IMG/VR virus record: IMGVR_UViG_3300022868_000009
Coordinates: 1 to 64,000 of that record
DNA length: 64,000 nucleotides
Strand: one strand, 5' to 3'
Positions 11,669-47,771 of the stretch are shown one piece after another (position 1 is the stretch's first letter; each line of letters opens with the position of its first letter). The notes beneath the pieces were generated by a model, which was given only the letters and a program-made list of their open reading frames with translations, made no database searches and was not told where the DNA came from. Made by a program: the position numbers and the translations under genes.

Positions 11669-12955
11669 ATGAATATTAAGCTTGCACTATTTAACTTTAA
11701 AAATGAGTTAACTATCGACCAATTAGATGAAGCAAAAATTGCTCAATTACATCTAGAAAACTACGAAAATCTTAGTGAAAAAGAAATGTTTGAATCATTA
11801 AGAGGGCAGTTAAACGGTTTCACATATGAATCTAAAGTAGTATCATTCTTAGAATCAGTTAAAGATGAAATAGATTCTAAACCACTTATTTATGAATTAA
11901 AAGACCTTTATAAAAAAGTAGAAAGAAAAAATCTAGGTCTTATTTACAGACAACCTCTTGTAACTCTTCTTGAAATTATTAATAGACAAGATGACGAATC
12001 AAGAATGGATGGTGTTTTAAATGAACTTTCAATTTATGATTGGGTTCCTGAAATTAAAGCTTTTTTATTAAATCAAACTAAAAATCCAATGGAACATCAA
12101 AATCTTCAAAGAAATGGTAACGCTTCTAAGATTTACACATTGGTTGAAAAATGTAATGAAGGTAGTCTAGTATTTATTTCTGATAGATGGTTCTTAATTA
12201 ATGAATCAGAAATCAAACAAGTTTTATTAGATGATTATGTACAAGATATTGAAAAAATGAGAGAAGTTAGATTACTAGAACAAGTACTTGATACTGCAGA
12301 AATTCATGGTGATAGAATTGAATTCAAAATTGATGAACAATTATATATTGGAATTTCAACTAAAGATAAAAACATTATCTATATGAATGGTGAAAAACTT
12401 GATAAAGAAACTACATTAGAAAGCATTTTTAATTCACCAATTGTACCTTACTTAAAAAGAAATCAATACGTTCTTTTAGAAACTACTAGAAATAATTTAG
12501 ACAAATTAATGGATCTTGATATTGCAGTTAGAGTTGAAAACCCACTTAATCCATATTTAGAAGCTTACTGTTTCAATTATAAAGATAAAATGTATTTATA
12601 TTCAAGAGATATGAGAACTGGTTCTGCTTTCTTTCAATATGAAAATGCTTCTGAAATTATCAGAGATATTCAAAAAGAACTTGATTACGATTTAACTAAA
12701 TTTTTCGAAAATAAACTTTCAAAAGAACTTAAACATCTAAGAGCTTTAGAAGATAAAGAAAAATCAATTGAAATGAAACTTAAAGAAATTAGTGAATCTG
12801 TTGAATTACTTAAAGATTCTGATGTTTGGGAAGAAGAAGAAATACAACTAGTTTATAAAAACTTCATGACTCAAAAAAATACACTTCTTAAAAATTTCAA
12901 TTTAATTAAAAACGATAAAATTAAAGCTAGAAAATTAGTTATTAATGGACATTAA
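11669..12955 (+). CDS. Hypothetical protein (about 428 aa, coiled-coil C-terminus), possibly head-associated
   Basis: Long ORF divergent from the portal gene; ATG at 11669 preferred over GTG at 11639. Confidence 0.75.
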   Translation: MNIKLALFNFKNELTIDQLDEAKIAQLHLENYENLSEKEMFESLRGQLNGFTYESKVVSFLESVKDEIDSKPLIYELKDLYKKVERKNLGLIYRQPLVTLLEIINRQDDESRMDGVLNELSIYDWVPEIKAFLLNQTKNPMEHQNLQRNGNASKIYTLVEKCNEGSLVFISDRWFLINESEIKQVLLDDYVQDIEKMREVRLLEQVLDTAEIHGDRIEFKIDEQLYIGISTKDKNIIYMNGEKLDKETTLESIFNSPIVPYLKRNQYVLLETTRNNLDKLMDLDIAVRVENPLNPYLEAYCFNYKDKMYLYSRDMRTGSAFFQYENASEIIRDIQKELDYDLTKFFENKLSKELKHLRALEDKEKSIEMKLKEISESVELLKDSDVWEEEEIQLVYKNFMTQKNTLLKNFNLIKNDKIKARKLVINGH

Positions 12956-23156: not shown

Positions 23157-24824
23157 TTATTTAGTATTTAACAAATAAACATTTTCTCCATCATTACACA
23201 CAATGCCTGCATTAGTTACAAATATTTGGCTGTCTTCACTTACTAAATCACATTTGAAATTTGAAATTTCACTAAAATCATCAGGTCTTAATATTAAAAT
23301 TGCATCATCTTCTGGTTTAACTACATAACTTCCTTCTTTATATCCAATATGACTCATATTATTAATTTTATCAGCGTCATATAACATATTCATACCTTTT
23401 ATTTTAAACATATTATATTTAATTTTTTCATCATCTAAATATTGTACAACTCCAATATCACCAATTTGATAAATATCTTTCACTATTTGTGGCATTTTAA
23501 TATGATTTAAAGTATCATTATTATTATAATAGATATAAGAAAAACCACCAATATTTTGAATTAAACCTTCATATTTTCTAAAACTTCTACCATAAACATT
23601 TCTGTTCTCAACTTTAACATTAACTCCATCTTTATTACTTATAACATTATCTAAATATATTCTATACATTAATTCTTTTTCAACTACCACTAAAATATTA
23701 TTATATCTATGAATTGATAATGGTTTATTAAAAGATACATTAAGTACTTTTTTCATTGTAAAATCTTTATTTACATAGAAAAGTTCATTGTTTTTAGAAA
23801 CATAAAAATGCTTATCTGTTGGATAAGTTTCATAAGATGAATCTAATTCACCTAAAGTTTTATGATATCCTTTAGTTGCAACATCAAATATAACAGTTTT
23901 ATCTTTTAAATGTATACACAACTTATTATTACTAGTATTTATATACTTTACAATTCCATTTTCAATTAATTCACTCACAGCTAGTTGATTTGTTTTTTGA
24001 ATTGTTTTAACCTTCTTCTTGATAATTGTCTTTGCGGATGGCTTTAAATCTATGATAAATCTTTCGCCTTCACGAAAAATTCTTTCAAATTGTGATTGTA
24101 AACCTGGATTTTGTATTGGTTCATAACATTTTGGAATTTTCAAATTATTATCATTTAAAAATACAGGTATTTTATAAATCATTCTATCAGCCATTGAAGG
24201 ATAATTTTTATGTATACCTTTAAATGGATGTAAATTAGTTAACATATTAAAAATTAATACAGCTAAAGAAAAATAATCACTTTCTTTATTTATTCTACCA
24301 TGATATAAATAATCTCTAATATCATCTAATAATCTACCAGAATGTGGGTTTCCTGGTGTTTGATATGAATCTACATCAATAAAAGACATAGAACCTTTAT
24401 CATTTATTAATATATTAAATGGATTTAAGTCACCAATTATAATATCTTGTTTATGTATATACTGTACTGCTTCAATTAATTTTTGTGCGATTTTAAATTT
24501 CAAATTATCATCAATATTATTACGCTTACAAAAATTAGAATTATATACAGAAAATAAAGGGAAATGATCATCTGAAACCATACTCATAACATATCCTACA
24601 ATTTTCTTTTTATCATATAATATATTTTCTGGTTTTACGAATAAATTAGATTTGATATCTGATAAACTTCTAAATTTACTTTCTGACATAGGTTCTATAC
24701 CAGGTAAATATAATTTTGCAACTTTATTTCCACTCAATTCGATAATTCTGCCTTCACCACCTCTGGTTATTTCTTTATTATCATCAACATTAAATACATT
24801 TCCTCTGCTATCATATAATTTCAT
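23157..24824 (-). CDS. Ser/Thr protein kinase (YegI/TerY-P-associated type)
   Basis: TRGGEGRI Gly-loop, VAKLY, IGDLNPFNILI catalytic loop, IDVDSY, SDYFSLAVLIF. Confidence 0.85.
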   Translation of the reverse strand: MKLYDSRGNVFNVDDNKEITRGGEGRIIELSGNKVAKLYLPGIEPMSESKFRSLSDIKSNLFVKPENILYDKKKIVGYVMSMVSDDHFPLFSVYNSNFCKRNNIDDNLKFKIAQKLIEAVQYIHKQDIIIGDLNPFNILINDKGSMSFIDVDSYQTPGNPHSGRLLDDIRDYLYHGRINKESDYFSLAVLIFNMLTNLHPFKGIHKNYPSMADRMIYKIPVFLNDNNLKIPKCYEPIQNPGLQSQFERIFREGERFIIDLKPSAKTIIKKKVKTIQKTNQLAVSELIENGIVKYINTSNNKLCIHLKDKTVIFDVATKGYHKTLGELDSSYETYPTDKHFYVSKNNELFYVNKDFTMKKVLNVSFNKPLSIHRYNNILVVVEKELMYRIYLDNVISNKDGVNVKVENRNVYGRSFRKYEGLIQNIGGFSYIYYNNNDTLNHIKMPQIVKDIYQIGDIGVVQYLDDEKIKYNMFKIKGMNMLYDADKINNMSHIGYKEGSYVVKPEDDAILILRPDDFSEISNFKCDLVSEDSQIFVTNAGIVCNDGENVYLLNTK

Positions 24825-24835
24825 ATCAGTAATAT

Positions 24836-25576
24836 TTAAGTTTTGTCAATTATTATTGCCTTTGGTTCTATATTATCTTCAATAAAAATTAATCTTACAA
24901 TAGATAAATCATCATAATGATAATATCCTTTTTTATCAAGTATGTTACAAAGTCTTGGTAACATAGCTTTACTCTTTAATATTTTTTGTTCTCTCAATAA
25001 AGAGTTCATTGGTTCTTCTAATGATATTAATCCTTCATTTTTAAATGTAAATATACCATCACTCATCACTGAAATATCTTCAACATTTTCATGGTTCATT
25101 ATATAAAAAGTATTCCAAACTTTTTCAAATGTTTCATTTAAATGATAGGCTATATAATCAGGTTGGTTATTTTGATCAACTTCATATAATTCATCATTTA
25201 CCATATAAGCACCATCACCTGATATTACTACGAATGACATTCTAGTTGAAAAATCGGTAATTGAAAAAACAATTGTAGATAGAATTTCATCCAAATTTAG
25301 AGTTAAAATATTCTTAATTGCGATTAGAGAGATAAAAAATTTATTTAAGACAATCTTACATATCTCCTCTGGCGACCCCTTAAAAACTAAAGATTCTTCT
25401 ATGACTTTCCTTAATATTTTCTTAAATAAACTTGAAGCAAAATGAGAATCTACTCCTCCAGAACAACCATCAAAAATAGCCATAAATACATAATCATCTA
25501 AAACCATTCGAAAAGTAGAGTCTTCACACTGTTTGTGATCAGACCCTATTCTCAATATTTCTCTTATATAATACAT
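24836..25576 (-). CDS. PP2C-family protein phosphatase (YegK-like)
   Basis: QCEDS, AIFDGCSGG, SGDG, VMSDGI, YDDLSIV motifs; ATG at 25576 preferred to GTG at 25696. Confidence 0.85.
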   Translation of the reverse strand: MYYIREILRIGSDHKQCEDSTFRMVLDDYVFMAIFDGCSGGVDSHFASSLFKKILRKVIEESLVFKGSPEEICKIVLNKFFISLIAIKNILTLNLDEILSTIVFSITDFSTRMSFVVISGDGAYMVNDELYEVDQNNQPDYIAYHLNETFEKVWNTFYIMNHENVEDISVMSDGIFTFKNEGLISLEEPMNSLLREQKILKSKAMLPRLCNILDKKGYYHYDDLSIVRLIFIEDNIEPKAIIIDKT

Positions 25577-25577
25577 T

Positions 25578-25863
25578 TTAATTATTAAATTTTGGTTTAT
25601 ATTTGACAGGTTCAATCTTATATGTGTATTCTTTTTTACCACATATTTTACATTTTCTACTCCATCTATCTTTTTGTTTATCAATATAGTAACCATCGGG
25701 ATGGGGGGTCACTACCATGTCCCTCATAGTGAGTGAACACCCATTTCTGGTAAGTTTCTGAATCATATTTAGTATCTTCGAACTTGTGACTACAATTACT
25801 AATCAATCGTTCTTGTGTTTCAATTTGTTTCTTTAACTCTTTTATTTTGTCTATTGATTTCAT
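25578..25863 (-). pseudogene. Small Zn-ribbon-like gene split by a frameshift in a C6 run
   Basis: ORFs 25681-25863 and 25578-25766 join into one roughly 94-aa protein (CSH...RKCKICGK) if one C is removed from GAC CCC CCA T (G6 at 25703-25708 on +). Confidence 0.55.
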
Positions 25864-25864
25864 A

Positions 25865-26077
25865 TTAATTAATTATTTCATTTTCATCGTTAGGTGTTTC
25901 TAAATATGCGTCTAATACTTTAAAATTAAGCAAACTACTATGAATTTTATTAAACTCTTTCTTTGCATCATCAATGTTTAATGCCCAGAGGTATTTATGA
26001 TTATTTAAAGGTTCCTCTGGTTGATGTGGAGAATATGATTCATACTCAACTTTAAAAACTTTTTGTGTTCTTTTCAT
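25865..26077 (-). CDS. Hypothetical protein
   Basis: 70-aa ORF tightly packed in the operon. Confidence 0.6.
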   Translation of the reverse strand: MKRTQKVFKVEYESYSPHQPEEPLNNHKYLWALNIDDAKKEFNKIHSSLLNFKVLDAYLETPNDENEIIN

Positions 26078-26078
26078 A

Positions 26079-26783
26079 TTAAAAACTTACATTTGTAATA
26101 GCTTTACCACTTGATGTTGTAGAAATTGAAGATGAAATAAAATCAATCATTTTTCTGATTTCTTTTGATGATAGTCCAACATAAGCTAAATGTTGTACTC
26201 CCATGTCTTCTTTTGCTTCTTCATAGTACTGTTTGTTAGTGTCTCCAATACCAAACATAATTGATGTGAAACTAAAGGTATTTTTTTCATTATTTGTGAA
26301 ATCTTGGATTTTCTTTTTAACATCATCACTAGCTCCATATCTTGATGAATTATCCATTCCATCTGTTAAAATGAAAACTAATGTTTTTGTATTAATACCA
26401 CTATCTTCAAGATTTTTTCTATAATCTAAGGCATTATCTAAGGCTTTGTCTACTGCATCATAAAGTGCAGTTCCACCACCTTTAGGAGTGAAATCCATTT
26501 GAGGTACGTTAACAACTGGTTGAAAACCTGTTTTAACTTCTACTCTCTCACAGAATTCTATAGTAGATACAAACAATCTATCTGCAATATGAGATTTTTG
26601 CATTTCTTGTGTGAACTCATTGAATGCAACATTCAATTCATTATTATACCTACTAATTGAGGGTGATACATCAACAACAAACACCGCGTTTATTGTTTCT
26701 TCGACTTGGATTTCTTCAGGGTCAAAATTATTGAATGATACTCCAAAGTCCATTCCGTTTCCTATTGTGCTAATATTTTTCAT
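26079..26783 (-). CDS. vWA domain protein (TerY/YegL-like)
   Basis: MIDAS DVSPS, GGGTALYDAV, VFILTDGMDNSS. Confidence 0.85.
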   Translation of the reverse strand: MKNISTIGNGMDFGVSFNNFDPEEIQVEETINAVFVVDVSPSISRYNNELNVAFNEFTQEMQKSHIADRLFVSTIEFCERVEVKTGFQPVVNVPQMDFTPKGGGTALYDAVDKALDNALDYRKNLEDSGINTKTLVFILTDGMDNSSRYGASDDVKKKIQDFTNNEKNTFSFTSIMFGIGDTNKQYYEEAKEDMGVQHLAYVGLSSKEIRKMIDFISSSISTTSSGKAITNVSF

Positions 26784-26794
26784 AACTTTATTTT

Positions 26795-27586
26795 TTATTT
26801 TTTATTAATGATTTTTATTGTGGAGACTCCAAATCTCATACCGAGTTTTTTAGCGTCTTCAAAAATATTAATTGAATTATCTTCAAATCCTGGTACATCT
26901 GATGTTGTATCTTCCAATAAAATAACTTTCTTCAAAAGATCGGGTGAAATTTCTATCATTTGATTTATTGTACTACATAAACAATGTGATTTTGCTTCAC
27001 CAGAAATATATATATTATCATATTTTTCAAGTGTCTCGATTAAACTTTGGTTAATTTGTGTTTCTGGTCTATTCATTACTGGAATATTTGCTCTAAAAGC
27101 TCCAAAATGTTCAGTCATTGGATAAGTACCTTTAGTAAATACTCCATAAAAGTTACCTTCTTTTGTCCAATCTATTACAGCATCCATAACTGAATTAATA
27201 ATAGCGGCTCCTGATGTACCAATAACACAATGTTCTGGCCATATACAATGTGGAAATTCACCTTGAGATTCTAATTCATGAATGTACTTGATTGCTTCAT
27301 TTGGATAAAATCTTGGTGTCCAAACTCCATCATCTACATCTTTCGATGTAATTAATGTAAAAGGATTAGGGAAGTTACCATCTTTGTCTTGCCAAAATGA
27401 TGGATGACTAATATCAATTGGATGATGACTGTCTTGTGTCATACCAATATAGTCAATTTTTTCTTTATTAGCTTTGATAAACTCAGCTAATCTTTCTGTG
27501 TCTTTGTCTGCACCTGGCACAGATAACGATCCTGTTGGCAAACAGAAATCGTTTTGAGCGTCGATAATTAATAATGCGTTTTTCAT
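26795..27586 (-). CDS. pncA: Nicotinamidase / isochorismatase-family cysteine hydrolase
   Basis: ALLIIDAQNDFC, TQDSHH, WPEHCVIGTSGA, KG, GEAKSHC. Confidence 0.85.
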   Translation of the reverse strand: MKNALLIIDAQNDFCLPTGSLSVPGADKDTERLAEFIKANKEKIDYIGMTQDSHHPIDISHPSFWQDKDGNFPNPFTLITSKDVDDGVWTPRFYPNEAIKYIHELESQGEFPHCIWPEHCVIGTSGAAIINSVMDAVIDWTKEGNFYGVFTKGTYPMTEHFGAFRANIPVMNRPETQINQSLIETLEKYDNIYISGEAKSHCLCSTINQMIEISPDLLKKVILLEDTTSDVPGFEDNSINIFEDAKKLGMRFGVSTIKIINKK

Positions 27587-27730: not shown

Positions 27731-27760
27731 GAAAACCAATCAAAATTTGATTGGTTTTTT
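27731..27760. terminator. Intrinsic terminator after dam
   Basis: aaaaccaatcaaa-a-tttgattggtttttt. Confidence 0.65.
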
Positions 27761-27787: not shown

Positions 27788-28702
27788 TTAAAAGTTCATT
27801 ATTAAAACCTCATGTCCACCTTTATCCTTATCTTTCTTTTGGATAGATGTAGAAGCTTTATTAAAAGTTCTTTCTTCCCATCTATATTCATATTTAGGGA
27901 AAAACTTTTGCAAAGGTTCAAAATCATAATAAGATAATATGAATTTACCTTTAATCTTATGTAAGATTTTTGCTAATCGAGCATGACCTGCTTCACCAAA
28001 ATGTTCTAATCCTCTATAATAGTTCTTTTCAGTTGAAAAATATGGGGGATCGAGATAAAATAATGATTCTTCATCATCGTATTTTTCTATAAGATCTTGG
28101 AAATCTAAACATTCAAACTTATTTATTTTATCAAGTTTTTCTAAATTTTCTTCTTTTTGTAATTTACGAAGTAATATTTGCATTTTAGGTTCTGGACATG
28201 GTTTTTCTGGTTTGTAAGAACTAGCTGAATAAGAAAATCCAATTTTTTCATGAGATATACTTGAAAATGCATGTCTTAAAAGAAAAGCATATTTAAATCC
28301 TAATTCAAAATCTGGCATCTGAATTATTATTTCTTTACCAACATTATCAGTGTAAAGTTCTTTTTTAAATGATTGAAATATAGATTTGAATCTATTATAT
28401 TGTTCTTCATAGACATAACTCTCATCATTTTTAATAAAATGTATTAAACCATTAGGTTCATTCATTTCTAATAAATATTCTCTAAATTCTGGAATGGAAC
28501 AACAATGATAGAAATTTGTTAAAAAAGGATTTAAATCATTGTAGATTATTTTATCACAGAAAGAAAAATCGTTTTTGAAGTAAGGCCACATAGCACCTGC
28601 AAAAACTTCAACGTAAGTTTTTGTTTTATCTTTTAATTCTTTGGTAATTTGATCAAATAACCAAAAACTTTGTCTCGATTTTCCCCCGTAGAAGCTTATC
28701 AC
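27788..28702 (-). CDS. dam: DNA adenine methyltransferase (Dam/D12 class)
   Basis: YGGKS, YVEVFAGA, IIYNDLN, FYLDPPY, KFILSY, EVLIMNF. Confidence 0.9.
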   Translation of the reverse strand: MISFYGGKSRQSFWLFDQITKELKDKTKTYVEVFAGAMWPYFKNDFSFCDKIIYNDLNPFLTNFYHCCSIPEFREYLLEMNEPNGLIHFIKNDESYVYEEQYNRFKSIFQSFKKELYTDNVGKEIIIQMPDFELGFKYAFLLRHAFSSISHEKIGFSYSASSYKPEKPCPEPKMQILLRKLQKEENLEKLDKINKFECLDFQDLIEKYDDEESLFYLDPPYFSTEKNYYRGLEHFGEAGHARLAKILHKIKGKFILSYYDFEPLQKFFPKYEYRWEERTFNKASTSIQKKDKDKGGHEVLIMNF

Positions 28703-28711
28703 GTTGTAGTA

Positions 28712-29359
28712 TTATTTTTTCACTTTTTTAAAGTAATAAGATTTCAAACCATTTGTAAATGAGGAAACATCTTCTATTTCTTCATATTCTGGTAATGAAT
28801 CTTTAATTATGTTTCTGTAAAATTTTATTTTTGTTGGATGTTCTGTTTCACCAATTAATAATACAATTTTATTATAATTTAAACTAATGAAACCAATAGA
28901 TTTTTCTATTACATAAATCAATCTTTTAGTTAATTCTATAATTTCATTTTTATCAGTTTCAGTTTCATATTTTTTATGATTAATTAAATCTCTATTTTCT
29001 TTTGTAGTAAAAGACAAATTAAACACATTATCATTTTTAAATTGGTTTTCTTCTTTTACATATATAAAATCAATGATATATTCTTGTCCAGAATCAGTTT
29101 TAAATGGACTATAATAATTTATTTCATTTGTATAATATTTCGATTTTTCTTGTTTAATAGAAAATATTGTTTCTTTAGGTCTTGCAAAAATCTCATTTAA
29201 TATGAATTCATTAAATTTACCAACATATTTCTTTTTTGGATTCATTCTTAATTTTTCATACCCGATAATTTCGATAATTTCTGTACTTGATCGACCTTCT
29301 TTAATCAAAGATCTTAAATAGTCATTGTCTTTTTTAGTCCAATTTTCCGTAAATTCCAT
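28712..29359 (-). CDS. Hypothetical protein
   Basis: 215-aa ORF; internal KFNEFILNE CTS-like segment. Confidence 0.7.
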   Translation of the reverse strand: MEFTENWTKKDNDYLRSLIKEGRSSTEIIEIIGYEKLRMNPKKKYVGKFNEFILNEIFARPKETIFSIKQEKSKYYTNEINYYSPFKTDSGQEYIIDFIYVKEENQFKNDNVFNLSFTTKENRDLINHKKYETETDKNEIIELTKRLIYVIEKSIGFISLNYNKIVLLIGETEHPTKIKFYRNIIKDSLPEYEEIEDVSSFTNGLKSYYFKKVKK

Positions 29360-29426
29360 AATTTAATTATTTTTATATAGTACAAAATTAAAAAATTGTT
29401 GATTTTTTATTGGCAAGAAAAAAGAG

Positions 29427-29789
29427 TTAAACACTCTCTATTTTTTTGAGTTTTAATGTTTCTATTAGATGCTCAATTTTCGGTTTTGGTAAAAAACCAT
29501 TATAAATTTTAACTTCCCCCTTCATATTAATCATAATCAATGTTGGTAAACTTTTAACACCAAACATTTCAACAAGTTCATATTCATTTTCAGCATCTAC
29601 TTTAAAAAAATCAATTTCAGAGTATTTTATTTCCAATTGTTGTAAAACAACTTGAGTAATTTTACAGGGAGCACACCATTCAGCGTAAAAATCAATAATA
29701 CATGGTTTTGAACCTATAAATTTATAATCTTCATTTTTGCTAATTTCCAAAATTTTTTCTTTTAATTCTATTGCCGTTAAGTTTTTCAT
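29427..29789 (-). CDS. trxA: Thioredoxin
   Basis: IIDFYAEWCAPCK, FFKVD, FGVKSLPTLI. Confidence 0.9.
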   Translation of the reverse strand: MKNLTAIELKEKILEISKNEDYKFIGSKPCIIDFYAEWCAPCKITQVVLQQLEIKYSEIDFFKVDAENEYELVEMFGVKSLPTLIMINMKGEVKIYNGFLPKPKIEHLIETLKLKKIESV

Positions 29790-35921: not shown

Positions 35922-35981
35922 TATAATAATTATATTTTCTTCTATATATTAAAATACATATTGATAAATTTTATAATTATG

Positions 35982-36054
35982 TAACGCAGATCAGAATCGA
36001 ACTGACAGCCTTTGGGATATGATTCCAATGCTCTACCTATTGAGCTACTGCGTT
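35982..36054 (-). tRNA. tRNA-Met/Ile2 (CAT)
   Basis: Cloverleaf AACGCAG / GCTC-GAGC D stem / TTGGA-ATCATAT-CCCAA / GTCAG TTCGATT CTGAT. Confidence 0.75.
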
Positions 36055-36385
36055 ATTTATTTTTAATTCTATCTAATTTAATCTTTCGATCAATTCTTAT
36101 AATTTTCTTTTTAACTTCTTCATCTTTAAAATTTGGATGTAAATATAAATTACACATAACATGGAAAACATCTGGATTTATATCACCATTTTCATCTAAA
36201 CATGGTTTTAATATATCCATCATTATATATGTTCTAATAGATGTATAATTATTTTGAAATTCATAACGTTTACAAATAAAATCTATATAACTATCAACAT
36301 CAACAGGTATTATTTTATTCTCAAATTCGTCAATTAAAACATCAATTATATATTCATCATTAAAACCATTACTATCATCCGTCAT
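36053..36385 (-). CDS. Hypothetical protein (RKIKLDRI C-terminus)
   Basis: 110-aa ORF. Confidence 0.6.
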   Translation of the reverse strand: MTDDSNGFNDEYIIDVLIDEFENKIIPVDVDSYIDFICKRYEFQNNYTSIRTYIMMDILKPCLDENGDINPDVFHVMCNLYLHPNFKDEEVKKKIIRIDRKIKLDRIKNK

Positions 36386-36567
36386 CCTTTACTCTACTAA
36401 TTTAACTTTTCTTTGATACTGGTATTAAAATTCTACTATTTTCCATATAACTTATATTTCAAATAATATAATATGTTTAAAAATTTTGTATTTAAAAAGA
36501 ACCGTATCAATAATAAATTAATACGGTTTCAGTAGAGGGTAACTAATATAATTGGTAAGATAAAAAA

Positions 36568-36759
36568 CTATTCTTGTTCCTTTTTAGCTTTAAGGTTACC
36601 CTTAGTTTTTCCTTTTACTTCTTTTTCTTTCTTGTCTGGTCTAACTAATTCTTTCCAGATGTTTTTAGGACAATAATTATATCCGTTTGCTAACTTTTCA
36701 TAAACTTCCTTTTCTTTTACTCTAATTGGAAGGTCGTCTCCGAGTCTCATTGTTTTCAT
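36568..36759 (-). CDS. Small basic hypothetical protein
   Basis: 63-aa ORF. Confidence 0.55.
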   Translation of the reverse strand: MKTMRLGDDLPIRVKEKEVYEKLANGYNYCPKNIWKELVRPDKKEKEVKGKTKGNLKAKKEQE

Positions 36760-36767
36760 AAGCTAAT

Positions 36768-37277
36768 TTAATTAATTTTTATAATATTTGATTTTTCTAT
36801 TTTTATTGATTTTTCTATTTTTAATTTTTCTATTGGTTTTTCTTTTTTAATATTATTAAAATCTATAACCTTCAATGTTATAGTATCTGTTTTTTGTTTA
36901 AATGTAAATTCATGCTCACCTTTACCATAATGGTTTATTTTTACAAATAAATTAAAAACTGTATTTTCATTAATTTGTCTAGATTCATTTACTTTAAAAA
37001 TATATTTAATTTGTTTACCATCAAACTCATATTCAGCATAAAAATCTTTGTTTTTAGAATCAAGATAAACTACAGGTTTAATTTCACCATCATATGCAAC
37101 AAATTCATTTATATCTGCAAATGGACCAACAATTGCAAAACCAACAATAAATATAACTATTGATGCAAATACACACCATGCTTTCGTTAAAGATTTTTTA
37201 GAAAATATTGATAATAAAATAAATATCATTAATAATCCAGGACTAATTATCCATGCAAGTGTTAATAGTAAACTCAT
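36768..37277 (-). CDS. Hypothetical membrane protein
   Basis: 169-aa ORF with two N-terminal TM-like helices. Confidence 0.65.
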   Translation of the reverse strand: MSLLLTLAWIISPGLLMIFILLSIFSKKSLTKAWCVFASIVIFIVGFAIVGPFADINEFVAYDGEIKPVVYLDSKNKDFYAEYEFDGKQIKYIFKVNESRQINENTVFNLFVKINHYGKGEHEFTFKQKTDTITLKVIDFNNIKKEKPIEKLKIEKSIKIEKSNIIKIN

Positions 37278-37354
37278 TTTTTATATTTTTTTAATTTGTA
37301 TAAATATACAAAAATTTCAACTTAAAAAAAATTTTCGATTCTAAATTTTAATTG

Positions 37355-37427
37355 TAGGTATAGATGGATTTGAACCACCGACTTCTACTGTATAAGAGTA
37401 GCACTCTGACCCCTGAGTTATATACCC
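37355..37427 (-). tRNA. tRNA-Ile (TAT)
   Basis: GGGTATA / ACTC-GAGT / CTACT-CTTATAC-AGTAG / GGTGG TTCAAAT CCATC; close paralog of tRNA-Ile(GAT) at 39044. Confidence 0.85.
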
Positions 37428-37804
37428 ATGTCTAATCGTTTAAAAATTTTCCTTTCAATTGTTTCTATCATATAATTAGAATAAAAAAACAAATCGTACA
37501 TATTCTTTACCTCTTTTACATTATAATAATCACTATATTCATATATTTGATAAGTGATGCCTGTACCTGTTTTATAGGATGATGTATAACATATATATTC
37601 TTTATTTTTGTATTTTTTATATCTTACACTATGCAACGTGTTTATTATATAACCATTTTTAATATTTTTATAAACACTTTTAACATTTTTAATATTTTTA
37701 AAATCAAACTCATTAAATATACGTTGAAAAGCATGCTTAGGACTTAAAACCTTATTTTTTTCAAAATAATGTTCAAAACCAATTTGATATTTGTTTTTTC
37801 TCAT
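37418..37804 (-). CDS. Hypothetical protein
   Basis: 128-aa ORF; its 3' end overlaps the tRNA 5' end by 10 nt. Confidence 0.5.
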   Translation of the reverse strand: MRKNKYQIGFEHYFEKNKVLSPKHAFQRIFNEFDFKNIKNVKSVYKNIKNGYIINTLHSVRYKKYKNKEYICYTSSYKTGTGITYQIYEYSDYYNVKEVKNMYDLFFYSNYMIETIERKIFKRLDMGI

Positions 37805-37842
37805 ATTATTTTTGTATGTTTACGACAAAGTTTTCAATACTT

Positions 37843-37924
37843 AATATCTGATTCGAACCTACGTTGGGGCGTTTACCTCATCAGATTAACAGTCTGACAC
37901 CTTCGACCACTCGGACACAGATCA
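37843..37924 (-). tRNA. Degenerate tRNA (GTT anticodon, long variable arm, 3' T-stem strand missing)
   Basis: CCGAGTGGTCGAAGG D arm, TCAGA-CTGTTAA-TCTGA, GTAGG TTCGAAT then directly CAGAT with no CCTAC. Confidence 0.55.
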
Positions 37925-37932
37925 ATTTATTA

Positions 37933-38646
37933 TTACACAATTTCCGATTTTATTGCATTTGGTGGAATATTATCATAAGTATAATATGCTTCAGAATCTT
38001 CGTTAAACTTTGGATCTTTATGTAATTTAATATTATTAATCATCACTTTCATATCTATTTCTAGAATAATATATTCTTCCTTAGAATGAAATTCTTTTTC
38101 TTCTAAGTAATTTTTAGATATTTTTTCATTTCCAAATAAATAAATTCTTTCTGGATGTTGTTCAATAACGTTTTTAGTTTTAGGAACTATACCTTGTTTT
38201 TTAATTTTATCTAAATTTTTTTTATTTGTAACATGATATAATTTTTCTGGTACACCAACTTCAGAATCAAATCTTTTATTTAAATAAACTATGAAATCTT
38301 CATCTTTTTTCCAAACATGTGTTGAAATACTTGTTTTTTTACCATCCATATACTGGTTTGAAATATTATAACCTAAATTATTTACCAAAATCAATAAATC
38401 AGAATAAAATTCTTTTAATCTTTCTCCATAAAAATTAAGTTCAATTCTATCTTTAAGAATATATAATTTGACACTACCTTTTACTTTATGTTTTTTAAGC
38501 AAATCGTCGATTTTTTGAACTGATATATCATAATCAATACTTTTAATAAGACCCTCTTTAATTAAATTATAATTGAAAGACTCTAACATTTTATTATTAA
38601 AGTCATGATGATATCCACAAAATTCAAAATATTTTTTCATATTCAT
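37933..38646 (-). CDS. ADP-ribosyltransferase-fold protein (Tpt1/KptA-like H-motif) with CTS-like start
   Basis: KLYHVT...I.KQGI.PK...RIYLF...ILEI....YTYDNIPPNAI; paralog of 54608-55393. Confidence 0.6.
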   Translation of the reverse strand: MNMKKYFEFCGYHHDFNNKMLESFNYNLIKEGLIKSIDYDISVQKIDDLLKKHKVKGSVKLYILKDRIELNFYGERLKEFYSDLLILVNNLGYNISNQYMDGKKTSISTHVWKKDEDFIVYLNKRFDSEVGVPEKLYHVTNKKNLDKIKKQGIVPKTKNVIEQHPERIYLFGNEKISKNYLEEKEFHSKEEYIILEIDMKVMINNIKLHKDPKFNEDSEAYYTYDNIPPNAIKSEIV

Positions 38647-38677
38647 TATATATTAAATTCATTTTTTTGTTTATTTG

Positions 38678-38750
38678 AGGGGAAACTAGGACTCGAACCT
38701 AGGACACCTTGATTAACAATCAAGTACTCTACCAACTGAGTTATATCCCC
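38678..38750 (-). tRNA. tRNA-Asn (GTT)
   Basis: GGGGATA / ACTC-GAGT / CTTGA-TTGTTAA-TCAAG / CTAGG TTCGAGT CCTAG. Confidence 0.85.
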
Positions 38751-38831
38751 TGGTATAGGGCTAAAACCACTACCCTATCTTTGAAAGTTTACAAATCTAC
38801 CTGTGGTTAGGTCATAGAACTGCTCCTACAG

Positions 38832-38903
38832 TAGTCCGTAGGGGAATCGAACCCCTCTCTCTGGGCTGAAAACCCAACGTCCTGCGCAATAGACGAACGG
38901 ACC
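38832..38903 (-). tRNA. tRNA-Glu (TTC)
   Basis: GGTCCGT / TTGGG-TTTTCAG-CCCAG / AGGGG TTCGATT CCCCT. Confidence 0.85.
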
Positions 38904-38915
38904 ATAAATTACATG

Positions 38916-38997
38916 TAGCGGGTCTAGGAGTCGAACCTAGTATCTCGTGGGTTATGAGCCCAGAATGATTTATAATTATCCATTTCACTCCCCCGCA
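38916..38997 (-). tRNA. tRNA-fMet (CAT), initiator-like, enlarged D loop
   Basis: 1:72 T-T mismatch, GGG/CCC at the base of the anticodon stem, CTCATAA loop, CTAGG TTCGACT CCTAG. Confidence 0.75.
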
Positions 38998-39043
38998 ATA
39001 TAATTTCAATCTTTAAAAATTTATCAATATGTCAAAGAACTTG

Positions 39044-39117
39044 TGGGTATAGATGGATTCGAACCATCGACCTCTACCGTATCAGAGTAGCACTCTAACC
39101 AACTGAGCTATACACCC
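39044..39117 (-). tRNA. tRNA-Ile (GAT)
   Basis: GGGTGTA / GCTC-GAGT / CTACT-CTGATAC-GGTAG / GATGG TTCGAAT CCATC. Confidence 0.9.
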
Positions 39118-39118
39118 G

Positions 39119-39836
39119 TTATAATTTCAACCATTTTCTTATTGAATTATCACTAACACCATATTTTTTACCTACCTGTACATAATTACTTTCTTGAATT
39201 TCTTTCAATAAAATTTCTTTATTAGGTCTTTCTACTTTTCTGCTTTTTTCATGATAACATTCTACACATTGTTTTGATTGTCTTCATTTCATTACCACAT
39301 TCACAATAGTATTTTTTCTTTTCTTTTTTTTGATATTTTTGATATTTCTCTTTTTTTAAATCAGATTTATTAGATTTTGTTTTACTTTTACCACAATATG
39401 TGCTTGTCTGGCTATGACAATTTGGACATAATAATCTAAGATTTTCTAATCTATTATCTAAGTTATCACCATTTATATGGTCCAAATGTAAAGATATAGA
39501 TTTTCTTTTCCATTCATTTATTCCACATTCATCACATTTATATTCTAAAATATCTTCTTCAATAAGACGTTTTTTCAAAGAACCATTATTAGTATAAGTT
39601 GAATTTTCAACTAATATTTCATCCAACGAATAAGTTTTTGAAAAATTCTTAAAATTTTCACCTGTATTCCAACCTTGTCCTGTAAAATGTGATTTATCAA
39701 TATTATATAATTTAACATATTTTTTAATTGTTTTATAATTTCCACCTACTGGTCTTATGTCTAATTTTCTACAAACATCAGCAATTGAAAATGATTCTTT
39801 TACTATTTTCTCTAAATTATCTTTTTCATATTTCAT
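39119..39836 (-). pseudogene. HNH homing endonuclease, frameshifted before its C-terminal Zn/HTH domain
   Basis: LHLDHINGDNLDNRLENLRLLCPNCH in ORF 39249-39836; a shifted frame continues SKQCVECYHEKSRKVERP...KYGVSDNSIRKWLKL* to 39119, matching the C-termini of the other two HNH genes. Confidence 0.75.
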
Positions 39837-39931
39837 ATTAATATTTATTTTATATTATATATTAAAACTTAAAAGCTATATTTTTTAATGTAAATATACG
39901 TTTGATATATTTATATTAACTAAAAATAGTG

Positions 39932-40016
39932 TACCTGGAATGGGACTCGAACCCATACGACCATAAAGATCAATAGATTTTAAGTCTATCTCGGCTACCA
40001 ATTACGACACCCAGGC
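39932..40016 (-). tRNA. tRNA-Leu (TAA)
   Basis: GCCTGGG / ATAGA-CTTAAAA-TCTAT / long variable arm / ATGGG TTCGAGT CCCAT. Confidence 0.9.
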
Positions 40017-40235
40017 ATTTGTGTCTTATTTTATCATTATTAACGAATCCTTTTATAATTCATTCTTTCTTTTTTACCTTTTCTTTCTCTAATCAAATCG
40101 TGTTCAATTTCAATAGCGAATTTTAAGTATAACCACATATCTGAATTAGGTCTTTGTTTACTCATACCTAATCTATATTTAATTATTTTATTTCTAGTTT
40201 TTTTATTCATTTCTTTCCTTTCTTATATTTATTTG

Positions 40236-40315
40236 TACCTCTGGAGAGACTCGAACTCTCACACCTTTCGGCACTGGTGCCTAAAACCAGCGTGTCTACA
40301 TTCCACCACAGAGGC
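40236..40315 (-). tRNA. tRNA-Leu (TAG)
   Basis: GCCTCTG / CTGGT-TTTAGGC-ACCAG / GCCGAAAGGT variable arm / GAGAG TTCGAGT CTCTC. Confidence 0.9.
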
Positions 40316-40324
40316 ATATTTAAT

Positions 40325-40354
40325 AAAAAAGCCAGTTCTTTATTTTGAACTGGC
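40325..40354 (-). terminator. Intrinsic terminator of putative attenuator 1
   Basis: GCCAGTTC-AAAATAAA-GAACTGGC-TTTTTT, ending 10 nt upstream of tRNA-Leu(TAG). Confidence 0.75.
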
Positions 40355-40376
40355 TCTATAATTTAACAATAGTATA

Positions 40377-40442
40377 TTAGAGCCAGTCCCAGATTTCCTC
40401 TAGTAATAAATTAATAATCATATTTATATTTATATTCAACAT
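40377..40442 (-). CDS. Putative leader peptide 1 (MLNININMIINLLLEEIWDWL)
   Basis: 21-aa ORF with an A-rich upstream region; its last codons form the 5' strand of a 10-bp antiterminator. Confidence 0.6.
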   Translation of the reverse strand: MLNININMIINLLLEEIWDWL

Positions 40443-40474
40443 TTTTGTACTTTTTATTTTATTTTATTTTTTAG

Positions 40475-40546
40475 AGGCTCCGACTGAATTCGAATCAGTG
40501 TATCTAGTTTTGCAGACTAGTGCCTTAACCACTCGGCCACGGAGCC
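40475..40546 (-). tRNA. tRNA-Cys (GCA)
   Basis: GGCTCCG / CTAGT-CTGCAAA-ACTAG / U73 discriminator. Confidence 0.9.
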
Positions 40547-40557
40547 ATTATTTTTTG

Positions 40558-40652
40558 TGGGAGCCGAGGGACTCGAACCCCCCTACCGCAAAGTCCATTA
40601 CGACAATTTGTTGACGCGGATCGGTTTTACAGACCGATGCCGTTAGACTCCC
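40558..40652 (-). tRNA. Atypical tRNA-Tyr (GTA): no D arm, about 38-nt variable region
   Basis: Acceptor GGGAGTC/GGCTCCC plus A73; 8-nt linker TAACGGCA; TCGGT-CTGTAAA-ACCGA; GGGGG TTCGAGT CCCTC. Confidence 0.65.
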
Positions 40653-40658
40653 AAACTT

Positions 40659-41354
40659 TTACGACTTATTTTTTATTGTATTTTCATAAGTTTTTAACCA
40701 TTTTCTTATAGCATTATCACTAACACCATATTTTCTTCCAGTAGCAGAATAACCTACTCTTTTTATTTCTATTTTTAATTTTTCATAAGAAGGTCTTTCA
40801 ACTTTCCTGTTGTTTTTTGCTGAACATTTCACACACATTTTTGAATTTTTATGTATTTCATTACCACATTCACAATAATTTTTTTCTTTTTTCTTTTTTC
40901 TATTTTTACCAGCATGTGTATCTAATGTTGCATTACAATTAGGACATACAATCCTCAAATTTTCTATTTTATTATCATCATAAACACCATTCTTGTGATC
41001 CAAAATTAAACTCATTTTTTTACCATTCCATATTTCATCTTGTCCACATATTTCACATTTTCTTTCTTTTAAACCTTCATCATATAATCTTTCTTTTAAA
41101 TGTGTTCTACTAAATGTAGAATTTTCAACTAATATTTTTTCTAATGGTGTCTTATTTTTAGTTGATAAATATTTAATTTTATCATAACATTTAGTAAAAT
41201 GTGTTATATCCAAATCATACAACTCAATATATTTTTTCAATGTTTTAGGGTTACCACCAGCATTTCTTATTCCTAATTTTTCTAAACACTCTTTTTGTGT
41301 TTTAGATGTCTTAACTATTTCTTCAAGATTTTCTTTTGTCCATTTTAATTTCAT
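40659..41354 (-). CDS. HNH homing endonuclease with C-terminal Zn-ribbon/HTH
   Basis: LILDHKNGVYDDNKIENLRIVCPNCN, YCECG, KYGVSDNAIRKW. Confidence 0.85.
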   Translation of the reverse strand: MKLKWTKENLEEIVKTSKTQKECLEKLGIRNAGGNPKTLKKYIELYDLDITHFTKCYDKIKYLSTKNKTPLEKILVENSTFSRTHLKERLYDEGLKERKCEICGQDEIWNGKKMSLILDHKNGVYDDNKIENLRIVCPNCNATLDTHAGKNRKKKKEKNYCECGNEIHKNSKMCVKCSAKNNRKVERPSYEKLKIEIKRVGYSATGRKYGVSDNAIRKWLKTYENTIKNKS

Positions 41355-41414
41355 AAAAAAAAGTTTTCTTTTATATATTAAATCTCGAACCTCGTTTTTT
41401 CATTTTTTCATTTG

Positions 41415-41485
41415 TTGTCCCCAAAGGATTTAAACCCTTACCACAACCTTCAAAAGGTTATGTGCTATCATTACACCAGAGGACA
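41415..41485 (-). tRNA. tRNA-Gln (TTG)
   Basis: TGTCCTC / GTGT-GCAC / TAACC-TTTTGAA-GGTTG / AAGGG TTTAAAT CCTTT. Confidence 0.8.
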
Positions 41486-41584: not shown

Positions 41585-41590
41585 ATTATT

Positions 41591-46520: not shown

Positions 46521-47771
46521 CTATTTTTCATTTAAAAAATCTTCATATTGTTTAAGATATTCATCTGCATTTGGTGAAACCTCTAAGATATCAACTATCT
46601 GCGGGATAATTTCCCCTTTTTTCGCAATTGATACTCTAGCACCAGGAAATACTTTATTTTTAATTATATATCCAAGATTATGTAGACTAGCTCTTGAAAC
46701 AATAGTACCATCTAACTCAACTGGTTTTAACATTGCAACACCTGTAAATTCTCCGTCTTTTCCTAAAGTCCAATCAATATCTAATATAACTGTTTCGGTA
46801 TTGTTTGGTGGAAATTTAATTGCTACCATACTTTTAGGATGGTGTGATGTAACACCCATTTTATTTCTTAAAGATTCGGGATATTTTAAAACTATGCCAT
46901 CTAACCAAAATGGACATCTTTTTCTATATTTTTTAAACTCTTTATAGATTTTATCAAAATCATCAATTGATTTAAGCGTCATTATAAATGGTTTATATTT
47001 ATTATTAAATCCATTTTCTTCTAAAATATTCATAGTTTCAATAACTGGATAATTTCCATCATCTGTCACAGCTACCATATCATAAGCTACAAATGTTAAA
47101 TCTTGTATTTGCTTTAAACTATATTCTTCACCACTAATCAAACCACCAATATAATTTCTTGGATTTGATATACAACCTTCTTCTGATTCATCATATTTTT
47201 CAACCCATAAATCTTCTTCAATAACTAACTCACCCCTAATCTGATATTTATGTTCTTTTAAAGATATTTCAGCAGGTACGATATGTCTTACTTTTTCGGT
47301 TCTATCTTTACCATTCTTAGTATCATTGCCTCTAGTTAATGCTTGAACAAACTTACCATTTTCATAAATCAATTCAAAACCATTACCATCATATTTTCCA
47401 CTACATTCTATATATTCTGCCTTTCTTCTAGACAAGAATAAATTTAAAGTATGTAAAGGATAATTATTTTCATCTTCTACTTGTATTTTCTCTAATGATA
47501 ACATTGATGTTGGGTGTGGATATTTAGCTTCATCTTTTTCGTCAATATCAATAATATTAGCAGGTTCTAATCCTAATTTTTTAATTTGTTTAATACTAGG
47601 AAAATCAACTAATTTAGTTACTTCCAAAATTAAACTATGTTTTGTATCTTTAAGTTTTTGTTCAAATTTATCAAATTGTGCATCATTAATGGTAGGTTTA
47701 AATAAAATATAATATTCATACTTATATCTTAAATATTGTTCACACATTTGTTTAATTGTCTTTAAATCCAT
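46521..47771 (-). CDS. ligA: NAD+-dependent DNA ligase (adenylation plus OB domains only)
   Basis: YY...P.I.DAQFD (Ia), MLSLEK, KYDG, TRG, RGE, NPRN, DGIV, AIKF, RASLHN, GEIIPQI; ends at 416 aa without Zn/HhH/BRCT. Confidence 0.85.
   Translation of the reverse strand: MDLKTIKQMCEQYLRYKYEYYILFKPTINDAQFDKFEQKLKDTKHSLILEVTKLVDFPSIKQIKKLGLEPANIIDIDEKDEAKYPHPTSMLSLEKIQVEDENNYPLHTLNLFLSRRKAEYIECSGKYDGNGFELIYENGKFVQALTRGNDTKNGKDRTEKVRHIVPAEISLKEHKYQIRGELVIEEDLWVEKYDESEEGCISNPRNYIGGLISGEEYSLKQIQDLTFVAYDMVAVTDDGNYPVIETMNILEENGFNNKYKPFIMTLKSIDDFDKIYKEFKKYRKRCPFWLDGIVLKYPESLRNKMGVTSHHPKSMVAIKFPPNNTETVILDIDWTLGKDGEFTGVAMLKPVELDGTIVSRASLHNLGYIIKNKVFPGARVSIAKKGEIIPQIVDILEVSPNADEYLKQYEDFLNEK

What the first reader, a model, noticed from the sequence alone, without database searches (positions are those of the whole stretch)
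23157..27586. Phage-encoded nicotinamidase-vWA-PP2C-kinase operon (TerY-P-like triad plus PncA)
Seen: co-oriented and tightly spaced pncA, MIDAS vWA, two small ORFs, PP2C with intact Asp motifs, and a kinase with a long C-terminal extension. Established: vWA(TerY)-PP2C-kinase triads (E. coli yegL/K/I type) are known from Ter stress systems and as the TerY-P antiphage system. Inference: a phage-borne phosphorylation switch used for inter-phage exclusion or host takeover, with the amidase linking it to nicotinamide/NAD status.
Basis: partly seen in the sequence, partly recalled or inferred. Interest (0 to 1): 0.63.

Follow-up and report, generated by a model that had tools for sequence, protein, structure and literature searches.

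The report
Nicotinamidase with kinase switch in megaphage
A huge gut-type phage carries a nicotinamidase gene joined to a small signalling set (metal-binding adaptor, phosphatase, kinase); this four-gene block recurs in dozens of large phages and some Bacteroidota, inside NAD+-recycling gene clusters, so it most likely serves NAD+ recycling and is probably not a stand-alone defence system.

Summary
On the minus strand at 27586-23157 lie a nicotinamidase (PncA), a MIDAS vWA protein, a PP2C phosphatase and a Ser/Thr kinase, 1-11 nt apart.

Three corrections apply:
- The PP2C starts at 25576, not 25696.
- One "small ORF" is a zinc-ribbon-like gene split by a frameshift. Both small ORFs are an insert seen only in this phage.
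- The kinase's C-terminal extension is a beta-propeller.

- 64 of 65 IMG/VR viral contigs with a relative of this vWA have PncA beside it; 55 carry all four genes.
- 21 of 25 viral contigs found through PncA have the vWA next to it.
- In Bacteroidales chromosomes the triad is a three-gene insertion directly after pncA in pncB-pncA-nadE operons.

This phage also encodes PncB, NadD and NadE, which completes the nicotinamide-to-NAD+ route, and it encodes an NAD-dependent ligase.

The triad is related to E. coli YegL and YegI (TerY-P type). It lacks the zinc-ribbon or OB kinase tail of TerY-P and any defence-gene context.

Best reading: a phosphorylation switch coupled to phage NAD+ salvage. The mechanism is inferred, not shown. 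I found no paper describing this coupling.

The parts
27732..27758 (-). Terminator-like hairpin between the upstream Dam-type methyltransferase gene (28702..27788) and pncA. It probably marks the 5' boundary of the transcription unit.
   Evidence: 12-14 bp stem followed by a T run; 2 such sites found against 0.8 expected; sequence.
26795..27586 (-). Long-form nicotinamidase (PncA-like, 263 aa). It has the Asp-Lys-Cys triad (D9, K152, C202) and metal ligands (D52, H54, H119), plus a conserved insertion of about 50 aa between the metal motif and the WPxHC motif.
   Evidence: pncB and nadE sit next to its orthologues in bacteria and phages.
26079..26783 (-). Stand-alone vWA protein of YegL/TerY type (234 aa) with a complete MIDAS. 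Its Ser-rich C-terminal tail has invariant S217 and S219 and a terminal Phe.
   Evidence: (JGI names relatives 'YegL').
25865..26077 (-). 70-aa ORF with no family match. It is an insert specific to this phage and is not part of the conserved module.
   Evidence: no hits; no relatives in any fetched locus; absent in L009 and LR756500.1.
25578..25863 (-). Small zinc-ribbon-like gene (CxH...CxxC) split into two frames at a C6 run (25708..25703). This is an assembly error in a homopolymer or a real frameshift. It is an insert specific to this phage.
   Evidence: In L114 both halves are in one frame (11808-11966 and 11985-12092).
24836..25576 (-). PP2C-type Ser/Thr phosphatase (246 aa from M41). 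All metal-binding Asp residues are present (D19, D36, D121, D173, D222, D223 in this numbering).
23994..24824 (-). Kinase domain of the 555-aa Ser/Thr kinase (aa 1-277), YegI-like. It has a glycine loop RGGEG, K37, a catalytic loop GDLNxxN (D132, N137) and IDxD (D150) in place of DFG.
23157..23993 (-). C-terminal beta-propeller domain of the kinase (aa 278-555; 28 predicted strands, which I read as about seven blades).
   Evidence: (whole model best matches the LRRK2 kinase-WD40 half).

Best explanation
The block is the nicotinamide-entry step of a phage-encoded NAD+ recycling pathway, carried together with its own signalling switch.

Shown:
- PncA has every catalytic and metal-binding residue of a nicotinamidase.
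- The same phage genome also encodes PncB, NadD and NadE, so nicotinamide can be taken to NAD+ by phage enzymes alone.
- The genome also encodes an NAD-dependent DNA ligase, which consumes NAD+.
- The vWA-PP2C-kinase triad travels with PncA in phages and in Bacteroidota. The PncA-vWA pair is the most constant part.
- All catalytic and MIDAS residues are kept over deep divergence.

Inferred:
- The triad is a reversible phosphorylation switch that tunes or reports nicotinamide-to-nicotinate flux.
- The kinase's beta-propeller docks a partner. The partner may be the vWA's flexible Ser-rich tail ending in Phe.
- The kinase phosphorylates that tail, and the PP2C reverses this.
- The vWA MIDAS site then binds or releases its ligand, which could be PncA or another salvage component.

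Likely role: to keep NAD+ available for phage replication, including when host NADase-type defences release nicotinamide. The module was exchanged between Bacteroidota and their large phages. I do not read it as a stand-alone TerY-P defence system.
For: 1. PncA identity. The D-K-C triad and D/H/H metal site are invariant. The best solved match is yeast Pnc1. pncB lies next to orthologues that lack the triad (L045, L086).

2. A complete pathway in this genome.
- PncB scores 317 bits on TIGR01514 against a cut-off of 269.55.
- NadD scores 117.7 bits on TIGR00482 against a cut-off of 112.45.
- NadE scores 121.5 bits on TIGR00552 against a cut-off of 63.65.
- An NAD-dependent ligase is at 47771..46521.

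3. Linkage seen from the vWA side.
- PncA is directly upstream in 6 of 6 assembly contexts and in 4 of 4 GenBank phage records.
- It is also upstream in the one further hit, G170, among 401 evenly sampled Bacteroidota genomes.
- It is adjacent in 64 of 65 IMG/VR contigs, with identity as low as about 24%. The single exception is cut by the contig end. 55 contigs have all four genes.

4. Linkage seen from the PncA side. 21 of 25 viral contigs have the vWA next door.

5. Rearranged versions keep the pairs. PP2C-kinase | PncA-vWA occurs in L116-118, L150 and L165. vWA-PP2C-kinase-PncA occurs in L156.

6. Bacteroidales sister operons differ only by the triad. PncB-PncA-NadE-Nudix-MTase (L015, L040, L044, L051) compares with PncB-PncA-[vWA-PP2C-kinase]-NadE/Nudix (L016-L022). 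One of these lies on a 5.1-Mb contig.

7. Some phage clusters read PncB-PncA-vWA-PP2C-kinase-NadE (L141, L161).

8. A Spirosoma genome that has PncA but no neighbouring vWA has no orthologue of the vWA anywhere.

9. Catalytic residues of all four proteins are essentially invariant in 62-88 relatives.

10. Gut jumbo phages with full NAD+ synthesis sets are documented (PMC11662467).
Against: - No experiment links the triad to PncA activity.
- The one complex prediction (PncA with vWA) gave no answer.
- No residue signature separates triad-linked from unlinked PncA proteins. PncA therefore shows no obvious adaptation to a partner.
- In this phage, PncB and NadE lie about 90 kb away from PncA. The pathway is therefore not one unit here.
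- The triad could act on targets unrelated to NAD+ and merely be co-expressed with PncA.
- The phage record is only about 48% complete.
- Some bacterial MAG contigs could be mis-binned phage DNA. The 5.1-Mb and 6.0-Mb contigs cannot be.
Confidence: 0.6

Rival explanations
1. A stand-alone TerY-P-type defence system carried by the phage to exclude competing phages. PncA would be a passenger or accessory.
For: The triad is related to E. coli YegL and YegI. TerY-P-like modules were reported as antiphage systems (Gao 2020, as cited in PMC11090510). In bacteria the triad is sparse and shows presence/absence among close relatives, as accessory systems do.
Against: The kinase's C-terminal domain is a beta-propeller, not an OB fold or zinc ribbon. 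The context is NAD salvage, never Ter, restriction-modification or other defence genes, in about 90 loci. The module is much more regular in phages than in bacteria. No effector domain is present. PADLOC gave no system hit, but its models also miss E. coli YegL and PphC, so that blank carries no weight.
Confidence: 0.12
2. The kinase is a host-takeover or counter-defence effector. It would phosphorylate host proteins, for example NAD+-degrading defence enzymes. vWA and PP2C would hold it in check. PncA would be co-expressed because both serve to protect NAD+.
For: The kinase is catalytically intact and has a protein-binding beta-propeller. The closest structural clusters are mostly viral kinases. 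The module is nearly universal beside phage PncA but is a minority beside bacterial PncA.
Against: The same four genes sit in bacterial chromosomal salvage operons, where host takeover makes no sense. The PncA-vWA pair also occurs without an adjacent kinase in Cytophagales.
Confidence: 0.15
3. The vWA protein is a metal-delivery or assembly factor for the metal-dependent PncA, in the way vWA partners serve other metalloenzymes. The kinase and phosphatase would gate it.
For: PncA-vWA adjacency is the most constant feature, and the pair occurs alone in Cytophagales. PncA has a conserved metal site. TerY-P triads have been proposed to be metal-sensing switches (PMC11090510).
Against: There is no MoxR-type ATPase partner. 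Most long-form PncA genes in bacteria work without any vWA. No PncA-vWA interface was predicted, though that result is not evidence either way.
Confidence: 0.08
4. The adjacency is historical only. The four genes were transferred as one block and have no functional tie.
For: No residue signature distinguishes linked from unlinked PncA proteins.
Against: Linkage survives PncA divergence down to about 40% identity and vWA divergence down to about 24%. It also survives gene insertions of up to several kb and permutations of gene order.
Confidence: 0.05

Closest known systems
TerY-P triad (TerY-like vWA, PP2C, Ser/Thr kinase; E. coli YegL-PphC-YegI; Anantharaman et al. 2012 and Gao et al. 2020, as described in PMC11090510)
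   Same: It has the same three components in the same order. The vWA and the kinase domain are detectably homologous to YegL and YegI. MIDAS, PP2C and kinase catalytic residues are intact.
   Different: The kinase ends in a beta-propeller, not a zinc ribbon or OB fold. The triad is fused to a nicotinamidase gene and sits in NAD-salvage clusters, not in Ter, restriction or CoCoNuT contexts. The PP2C shows no specific similarity to E. coli PphC beyond the family motif.
NAD-jumbo phages: gut jumbo phages encoding complete salvage or Preiss-Handler NAD+ synthesis (PMC11662467)
   Same: This is a huge low-GC phage that encodes PncB, NadD and NadE, plus PncA and NAD+-consuming enzymes. Its relatives are associated with Bacteroidota.
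   Different: In text searches that paper does not mention a kinase or a von Willebrand protein. Here the PncA gene is bound to a signalling triad more tightly than to the other pathway genes.
Phage NAD+ reconstitution pathways NARP1, NARP2 and NARP3 (abstract of PMC13464706)
   Same: These are phage-encoded routes that rebuild NAD+ from breakdown products or precursors, and they can offset NAD+-depleting host immunity.
   Different: The chemistry differs: nicotinamide to nicotinate to NaMN to NaAD to NAD+, in four enzymes. None of the described NARP systems is reported with a kinase/phosphatase/vWA module.
ArnA-ArnB of Sulfolobus (a vWA protein that works in a phosphorylation-dependent way; abstract of PMC6509490)
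   Same: It is a stand-alone vWA protein that acts in a phosphorylation-dependent manner. This is a precedent for a vWA protein inside a kinase/phosphatase circuit.
   Different: It is archaeal, has an FHA partner and regulates motility genes. It has no metabolic enzyme partner. This is a resemblance only; I did not test homology.

Membership tests
Nicotinamidase PncA (isochorismatase-like hydrolases) | Catalytic triad Asp-Lys-Cys | tested here: met
   D9, K152 and C202 are invariant in 10 and in 21 aligned sequences. They align with yeast Pnc1 2h0r over residues 4-224.
Nicotinamidase PncA (isochorismatase-like hydrolases) | Metal site Asp/His/His | tested here: met
   D52, H54 and H119 are invariant.
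Nicotinamidase PncA (isochorismatase-like hydrolases) | Score above the curated family cut-off | tested here: not met
   PF00857 scores 22.7 bits against 27. NF008623 scores 50.8 bits against 174. This is a divergent long form with an insertion of about 50 aa.
Nicotinamidase PncA (isochorismatase-like hydrolases) | Genomic association with the Preiss-Handler genes pncB and nadE | tested here: met
   The window's own genome has these genes at 118-121 kb.
Nicotinamidase PncA (isochorismatase-like hydrolases) | Nicotinamide deamidase activity | not testable with these tools
   This needs an enzyme assay.
TerY-P triad | TerY/YegL-type vWA with MIDAS | tested here: met
   BLASTP against E. coli YegL gives E 5e-10. 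JGI names relatives YegL. The MIDAS residues are conserved in 88 relatives.
TerY-P triad | PP2C phosphatase with metal-binding Asp residues | tested here: met
   PF13672 scores 31.5 bits against a cut-off of 24. The Asp residues are invariant in 72 relatives. There is no specific match to E. coli PphC.
TerY-P triad | Ser/Thr kinase of the YegI kind | tested here: met
   BLASTP against YegI gives E 2e-11 over 323 aa from residue 1. K37, D132, N137 and D150 are conserved.
TerY-P triad | Kinase fused at its C-terminus to a zinc ribbon (Ter/CoCoNuT type) or an OB fold (defence type) | tested here: not met
   The C-terminal 278 aa fold as a beta-propeller. The definition is taken from PMC11090510.
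TerY-P triad | Neighbourhood of Ter, restriction or other defence genes | tested here: not met
   The neighbours are pncA, pncB, nadE, Nudix and SpoIIE-type phosphatases.
TerY-P triad | Recognition by defence-system models (PADLOC) | tested here: inconclusive
   There is no hit for the vWA or PP2C. E. coli YegL and PphC also give no hit, so the library does not test this.
TerY-P triad | Protection against phage | not testable with these tools
   This needs phage challenge assays.
NAD-jumbo phage (phage-encoded Preiss-Handler route) | Phage genome over 200 kb with structural genes | tested here: met
   It is a 344,634-bp virus record. Portal, major head protein and protease are present.
NAD-jumbo phage (phage-encoded Preiss-Handler route) | PncB, NadD and NadE all encoded by the phage | tested here: met
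   All three score above the NCBIfam cut-offs.
NARP2 (NAMPT plus NMNAT) | Nicotinamide phosphoribosyltransferase | tested here: inconclusive
   The only PF04095 match in the held 344 kb scores as nicotinate PRTase. The record is about 48% complete.

The most novel reading that the evidence does not exclude
The PncA-vWA pair is a sensor and not just an enzyme with a regulator. Nicotinamide released when a host NADase-type defence fires would be converted by PncA to nicotinate. The vWA MIDAS site would read out this carboxylate, or the state of PncA. The kinase and PP2C would convert that reading into a phosphorylation signal that changes the phage's programme, or the cell's programme in Bacteroidota. 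This would be a previously undescribed NAD-alarm signalling module, shared by large phages and their hosts.
Probability: 0.15. Interest if true: 0.85.

Novelty: new variant of a known kind. Interest (0 to 1): 0.66.

Why it matters
NAD+ depletion is one of the commonest ways bacteria abort phage infection, and phage routes that rebuild NAD+ are a current topic. All routes described so far are plain enzyme sets.

This finding is different. In dozens of large phages the nicotinamide-entry enzyme comes with a conserved kinase, phosphatase and vWA adaptor. This suggests that NAD+ recycling is regulated or sensed during infection.

It also gives the poorly understood YegL/PphC/YegI-type triads their first consistent metabolic partner, and so a concrete handle for finding their substrate and signal.

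Finally, it marks gene exchange between Bacteroidota and their megaphages.

Tried and rejected
- **Alternative genetic code.** ORF totals under code 11 already cover the genome (445 ORFs of at least 100 aa, about 318 kb of 345 kb). No other code was used.
- **Single-protein search of viral contigs with the kinase.** It found nothing. Alignments were needed.
- **PADLOC.** There was no system-level hit, only generic kinase models. The control with E. coli YegL and PphC also gave nothing, so the blank is uninformative.
- **Complex prediction of PncA with vWA.** The verdict was no answer (score 0.05 against a mark of 0.32). This is neither support nor evidence against binding.
- **Residues distinguishing triad-linked from unlinked PncA.** Only two weak positions were found (30 and 53), which are probably phylogenetic.
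- **36-nt match between the pncA/vWA junction and the nadE start region of the same genome.** It is A/T-rich sequence around two similar start regions and occurs only there. I judge it low-complexity.
- **Sigma-70 promoter scan.** It is not above shuffled expectation (49 found against 43.5 expected) and does not suit Bacteroidota-type promoters anyway.
- **PP2C against E. coli PphC by profile comparison.** Only the GDG motif aligned (E 0.052).
- **PncA tree.** This is the quick tree; the careful search did not finish. I use it only for the broad picture.
- **Big representative-protein search.** It was not used, because family scans and word searches settled the identities.

Full report
**What the window is**

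The window is the first 64 kb of a 344,634-bp linear virus record that CheckV rates about 48% complete. GC content is 25%. The standard bacterial code gives dense ORFs. The window holds a portal protein, a major head protein, a prohead protease, homing endonucleases and an NAD-dependent DNA ligase. It also holds ten tRNA genes. It is a very large phage. Its nearest GenBank relatives over this locus are uncultured phages of 462-595 kb.

**The observation**

Six ORFs lie head to tail on the minus strand between 27586 and 23157, with gaps of 1-11 nt.
- **PncA-like protein (263 aa).** It falls below the curated cut-offs. It aligns along its length with yeast nicotinamidase Pnc1. It keeps the Asp-Lys-Cys triad and the Asp/His/His metal site in every relative.
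- **vWA protein (234 aa).** It has a complete MIDAS.
- **PP2C.** It has all its metal-binding aspartates.
- **Kinase.** It keeps the glycine loop, the lysine, the catalytic Asp/Asn and the metal-binding Asp.

Three details need correction.
- Alignment with 13 homologues puts the PP2C start at 25576.
- The second small ORF is the front half of a zinc-ribbon-like gene that shifts frame at a C6 run. It is intact in one relative.
- Both small ORFs are missing from the closest relatives, so they are an insert and not part of the module.

A terminator-like hairpin at 27732-27758 separates the block from the upstream methyltransferase gene.

**The kinase tail**

The full-length model (pLDDT 84.8) shows a kinase domain followed by an all-beta domain. 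Its best whole-chain matches are the kinase-WD40 half of LRRK2. Folded alone, the last 278 residues give a confident beta-propeller (pLDDT 91.8, pTM 0.88). It resembles generic propellers such as Sec12, Vps18, BamB and Fbw7. In the ESM Atlas it is closest to clusters of mostly viral kinases.

**Is the PncA link conserved?**

- Four GenBank phage records carry PncA, vWA, PP2C and kinase in the same order. Two of them have other genes inserted between.
- The vWA has hundreds of relatives at about 55-70% identity. In all six assembly contexts I opened, a 261-263-aa PncA gene sits directly upstream.
- A scan of IMG/VR with the vWA alignment returned 67 contigs. Two are weak giant-virus hits.
  - Of the other 65, 64 have PncA adjacent. 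The exception is cut by the contig end.
  - 55 have all four genes within 6 kb.
- Starting from PncA, 21 of 25 viral contigs have the vWA next door.
- Where gene order is permuted, PncA stays with vWA and PP2C stays with the kinase.
- Across 62-88 relatives the MIDAS residues, the PP2C aspartates and the kinase catalytic residues are essentially invariant.
- The vWA keeps two invariant serines (S217, S219) and a Ser/Gly/Gln-rich tail ending in Phe in 81 of 88 relatives.

**The context is NAD+ salvage**

In bacterial genomes the long-form PncA occurs mainly in Bacteroidota. Many copies have pncB beside them.

Within one Bacteroidales clade the operon exists in two forms.
- Without the triad: PncB-PncA-NadE-Nudix-methyltransferase.
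- With the triad: PncB-PncA-vWA-PP2C-kinase-NadE or -Nudix.

One example of the second form lies on a 5.1-Mb contig. There the triad is a three-gene insertion directly after pncA.

Other bacterial observations:
- In Cytophagales the PncA-vWA pair occurs with SpoIIE-type phosphatases nearby.
- In an even sample of 401 Bacteroidota genomes the vWA orthologue was found in two. Both have the full four-gene block.
- In the same sample the long PncA (E at most 1e-40) was found in six.
- A Spirosoma genome with PncA but no adjacent vWA has no orthologue of the vWA at all.
- The module is therefore rare in bacteria but nearly regular beside phage PncA.

The window's own genome encodes PncB, a Nudix protein and NadE at about 118-121 kb. 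It encodes NadD at about 198.5-199.4 kb. PncB, NadD and NadE all score above the NCBIfam cut-offs. With PncA this makes the full route from nicotinamide to NAD+. Several other phages have PncB and NadE in the same cluster as the block (L141, L161).

**Relation to known systems**

The vWA and the kinase domain are homologous to E. coli YegL and YegI. The triad is therefore of the TerY-P kind.

The published descriptions of TerY-P have the kinase fused to a zinc ribbon or an OB fold. They place the triad with Ter, restriction or CoCoNuT genes (PMC11090510). Neither feature holds here.

PADLOC did not recognise the triad. It does not recognise E. coli YegL or PphC either, so this says nothing.

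Gut jumbo phages with complete NAD+ synthesis sets are documented, including Preiss-Handler clusters and pncA (PMC11662467). The terms kinase and von Willebrand do not occur in that paper. The jumbo-phage overview PMC7824862 mentions vWA only in other contexts. The other searches found no paper linking a nicotinamidase with such a triad. Within the library I could search, the coupling is undescribed.

**How it most likely works**

Shown:
- An intact nicotinamidase.
- An intact MIDAS adaptor.
- An intact phosphatase and kinase.
- Obligate gene linkage.
- An NAD-salvage context.
- A complete pathway in this phage.

Inferred:
- The triad is a reversible phosphorylation switch coupled to the nicotinamide-to-nicotinate step.
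- The vWA tail is the probable substrate or docking peptide for the kinase propeller.
- The MIDAS site is the output.
- The purpose is to secure NAD+ for phage replication, including under NADase-type host defence.

Weaknesses:
- The one complex prediction I could run (PncA with vWA) gave no verdict.
- Linked and unlinked PncA proteins show no distinguishing residues.

The direct-binding version of the model therefore remains open.

The rivals are a true defence system, a host-directed kinase, a metal-delivery role for the vWA, and mere hitch-hiking. All are less well supported, for the reasons given under each.

**Limits**
- No expression data could be obtained.
- The PncA tree is a quick tree.
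- Adjacency counts rest on tblastn with my own query sets at E thresholds of 1e-4 to 1e-6.
- The phage record is incomplete.

**Verdict**

This is a new variant of two known things, the TerY-P-type triad and phage NAD+ salvage, joined in a way not yet described. It is worth experimental follow-up.

Noticed in passing
window 25578-25863 (-), C6 run at 25703-25708: A small zinc-ribbon-like gene is split into two reading frames at a homopolymer run. In the IMG/VR contig L114 (11808-12092) the two halves are in one frame. This is either an assembly error or a real frameshift.
   Followed up: partly
window 44590-45627 (-): A 345-aa protein whose C-terminal half is a pantetheine-phosphate adenylyltransferase-like (CoaD) domain. 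It scores 99.7 bits, just under the cut-off of 103.3. This hints at phage-encoded coenzyme A metabolism. The N-terminal 200 aa are unassigned.
   Followed up: partly
window 46521-47771 (-): An NAD-dependent DNA ligase, which is an NAD+-consuming enzyme in the same phage.
   Followed up: no
window 35981-42442 (-): A cluster of ten tRNA genes (Met, Ile x2, Asn, Glu, Leu x2, Cys, Gln, Asp), all on the minus strand. No suppressor tRNA is among them.
   Followed up: no
window 1788-3440 (-) and 8010-9752 (+): Two large homing/HNH endonuclease genes (550 and 580 aa, same PHROG family). They flank the major head and protease genes and lie next to the portal gene.
   Followed up: no
window 27788-29789 (-) compared with L009 5351-6980: Thioredoxin and a Dam-type methyltransferase lie upstream of pncA in both this phage and its closest relative. 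The relative also has a ribosome hibernation factor (S30AE) gene there.
   Followed up: no
G000 117986-121083 (outside the window; loci L095, L096): A second NAD cluster of this phage: PncB, an 81-aa ORF, a 199-aa Nudix protein and NadE. A 36-nt A/T-rich stretch at the nadE start resembles the pncA/vWA junction (window 26773-26808). This is probably low complexity.
   Followed up: partly
L015-L022, L040, L044, L051 (Bacteroidales loci): A 726-aa protein with an N-terminal methyltransferase domain is conserved at the end of the pncB-pncA-nadE-Nudix operon, with or without the triad. Its role in NAD metabolism is unknown.
   Followed up: no
L019, L023, L025 (after the kinase, opposite strand); L007, L010: A second phosphatase of the SpoIIE type lies next to the module in bacteria. 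It is fused to a 7TM sensor domain in L019 or to TPR repeats in L007 and L010. This hints at extra inputs to the same switch.
   Followed up: partly
whole record G000: CheckV rates the 344.6-kb record as 48% complete, which implies a genome near 700 kb. A 716-kb gut phage is reported in PMC11662467. I did not test whether they are related.
   Followed up: no
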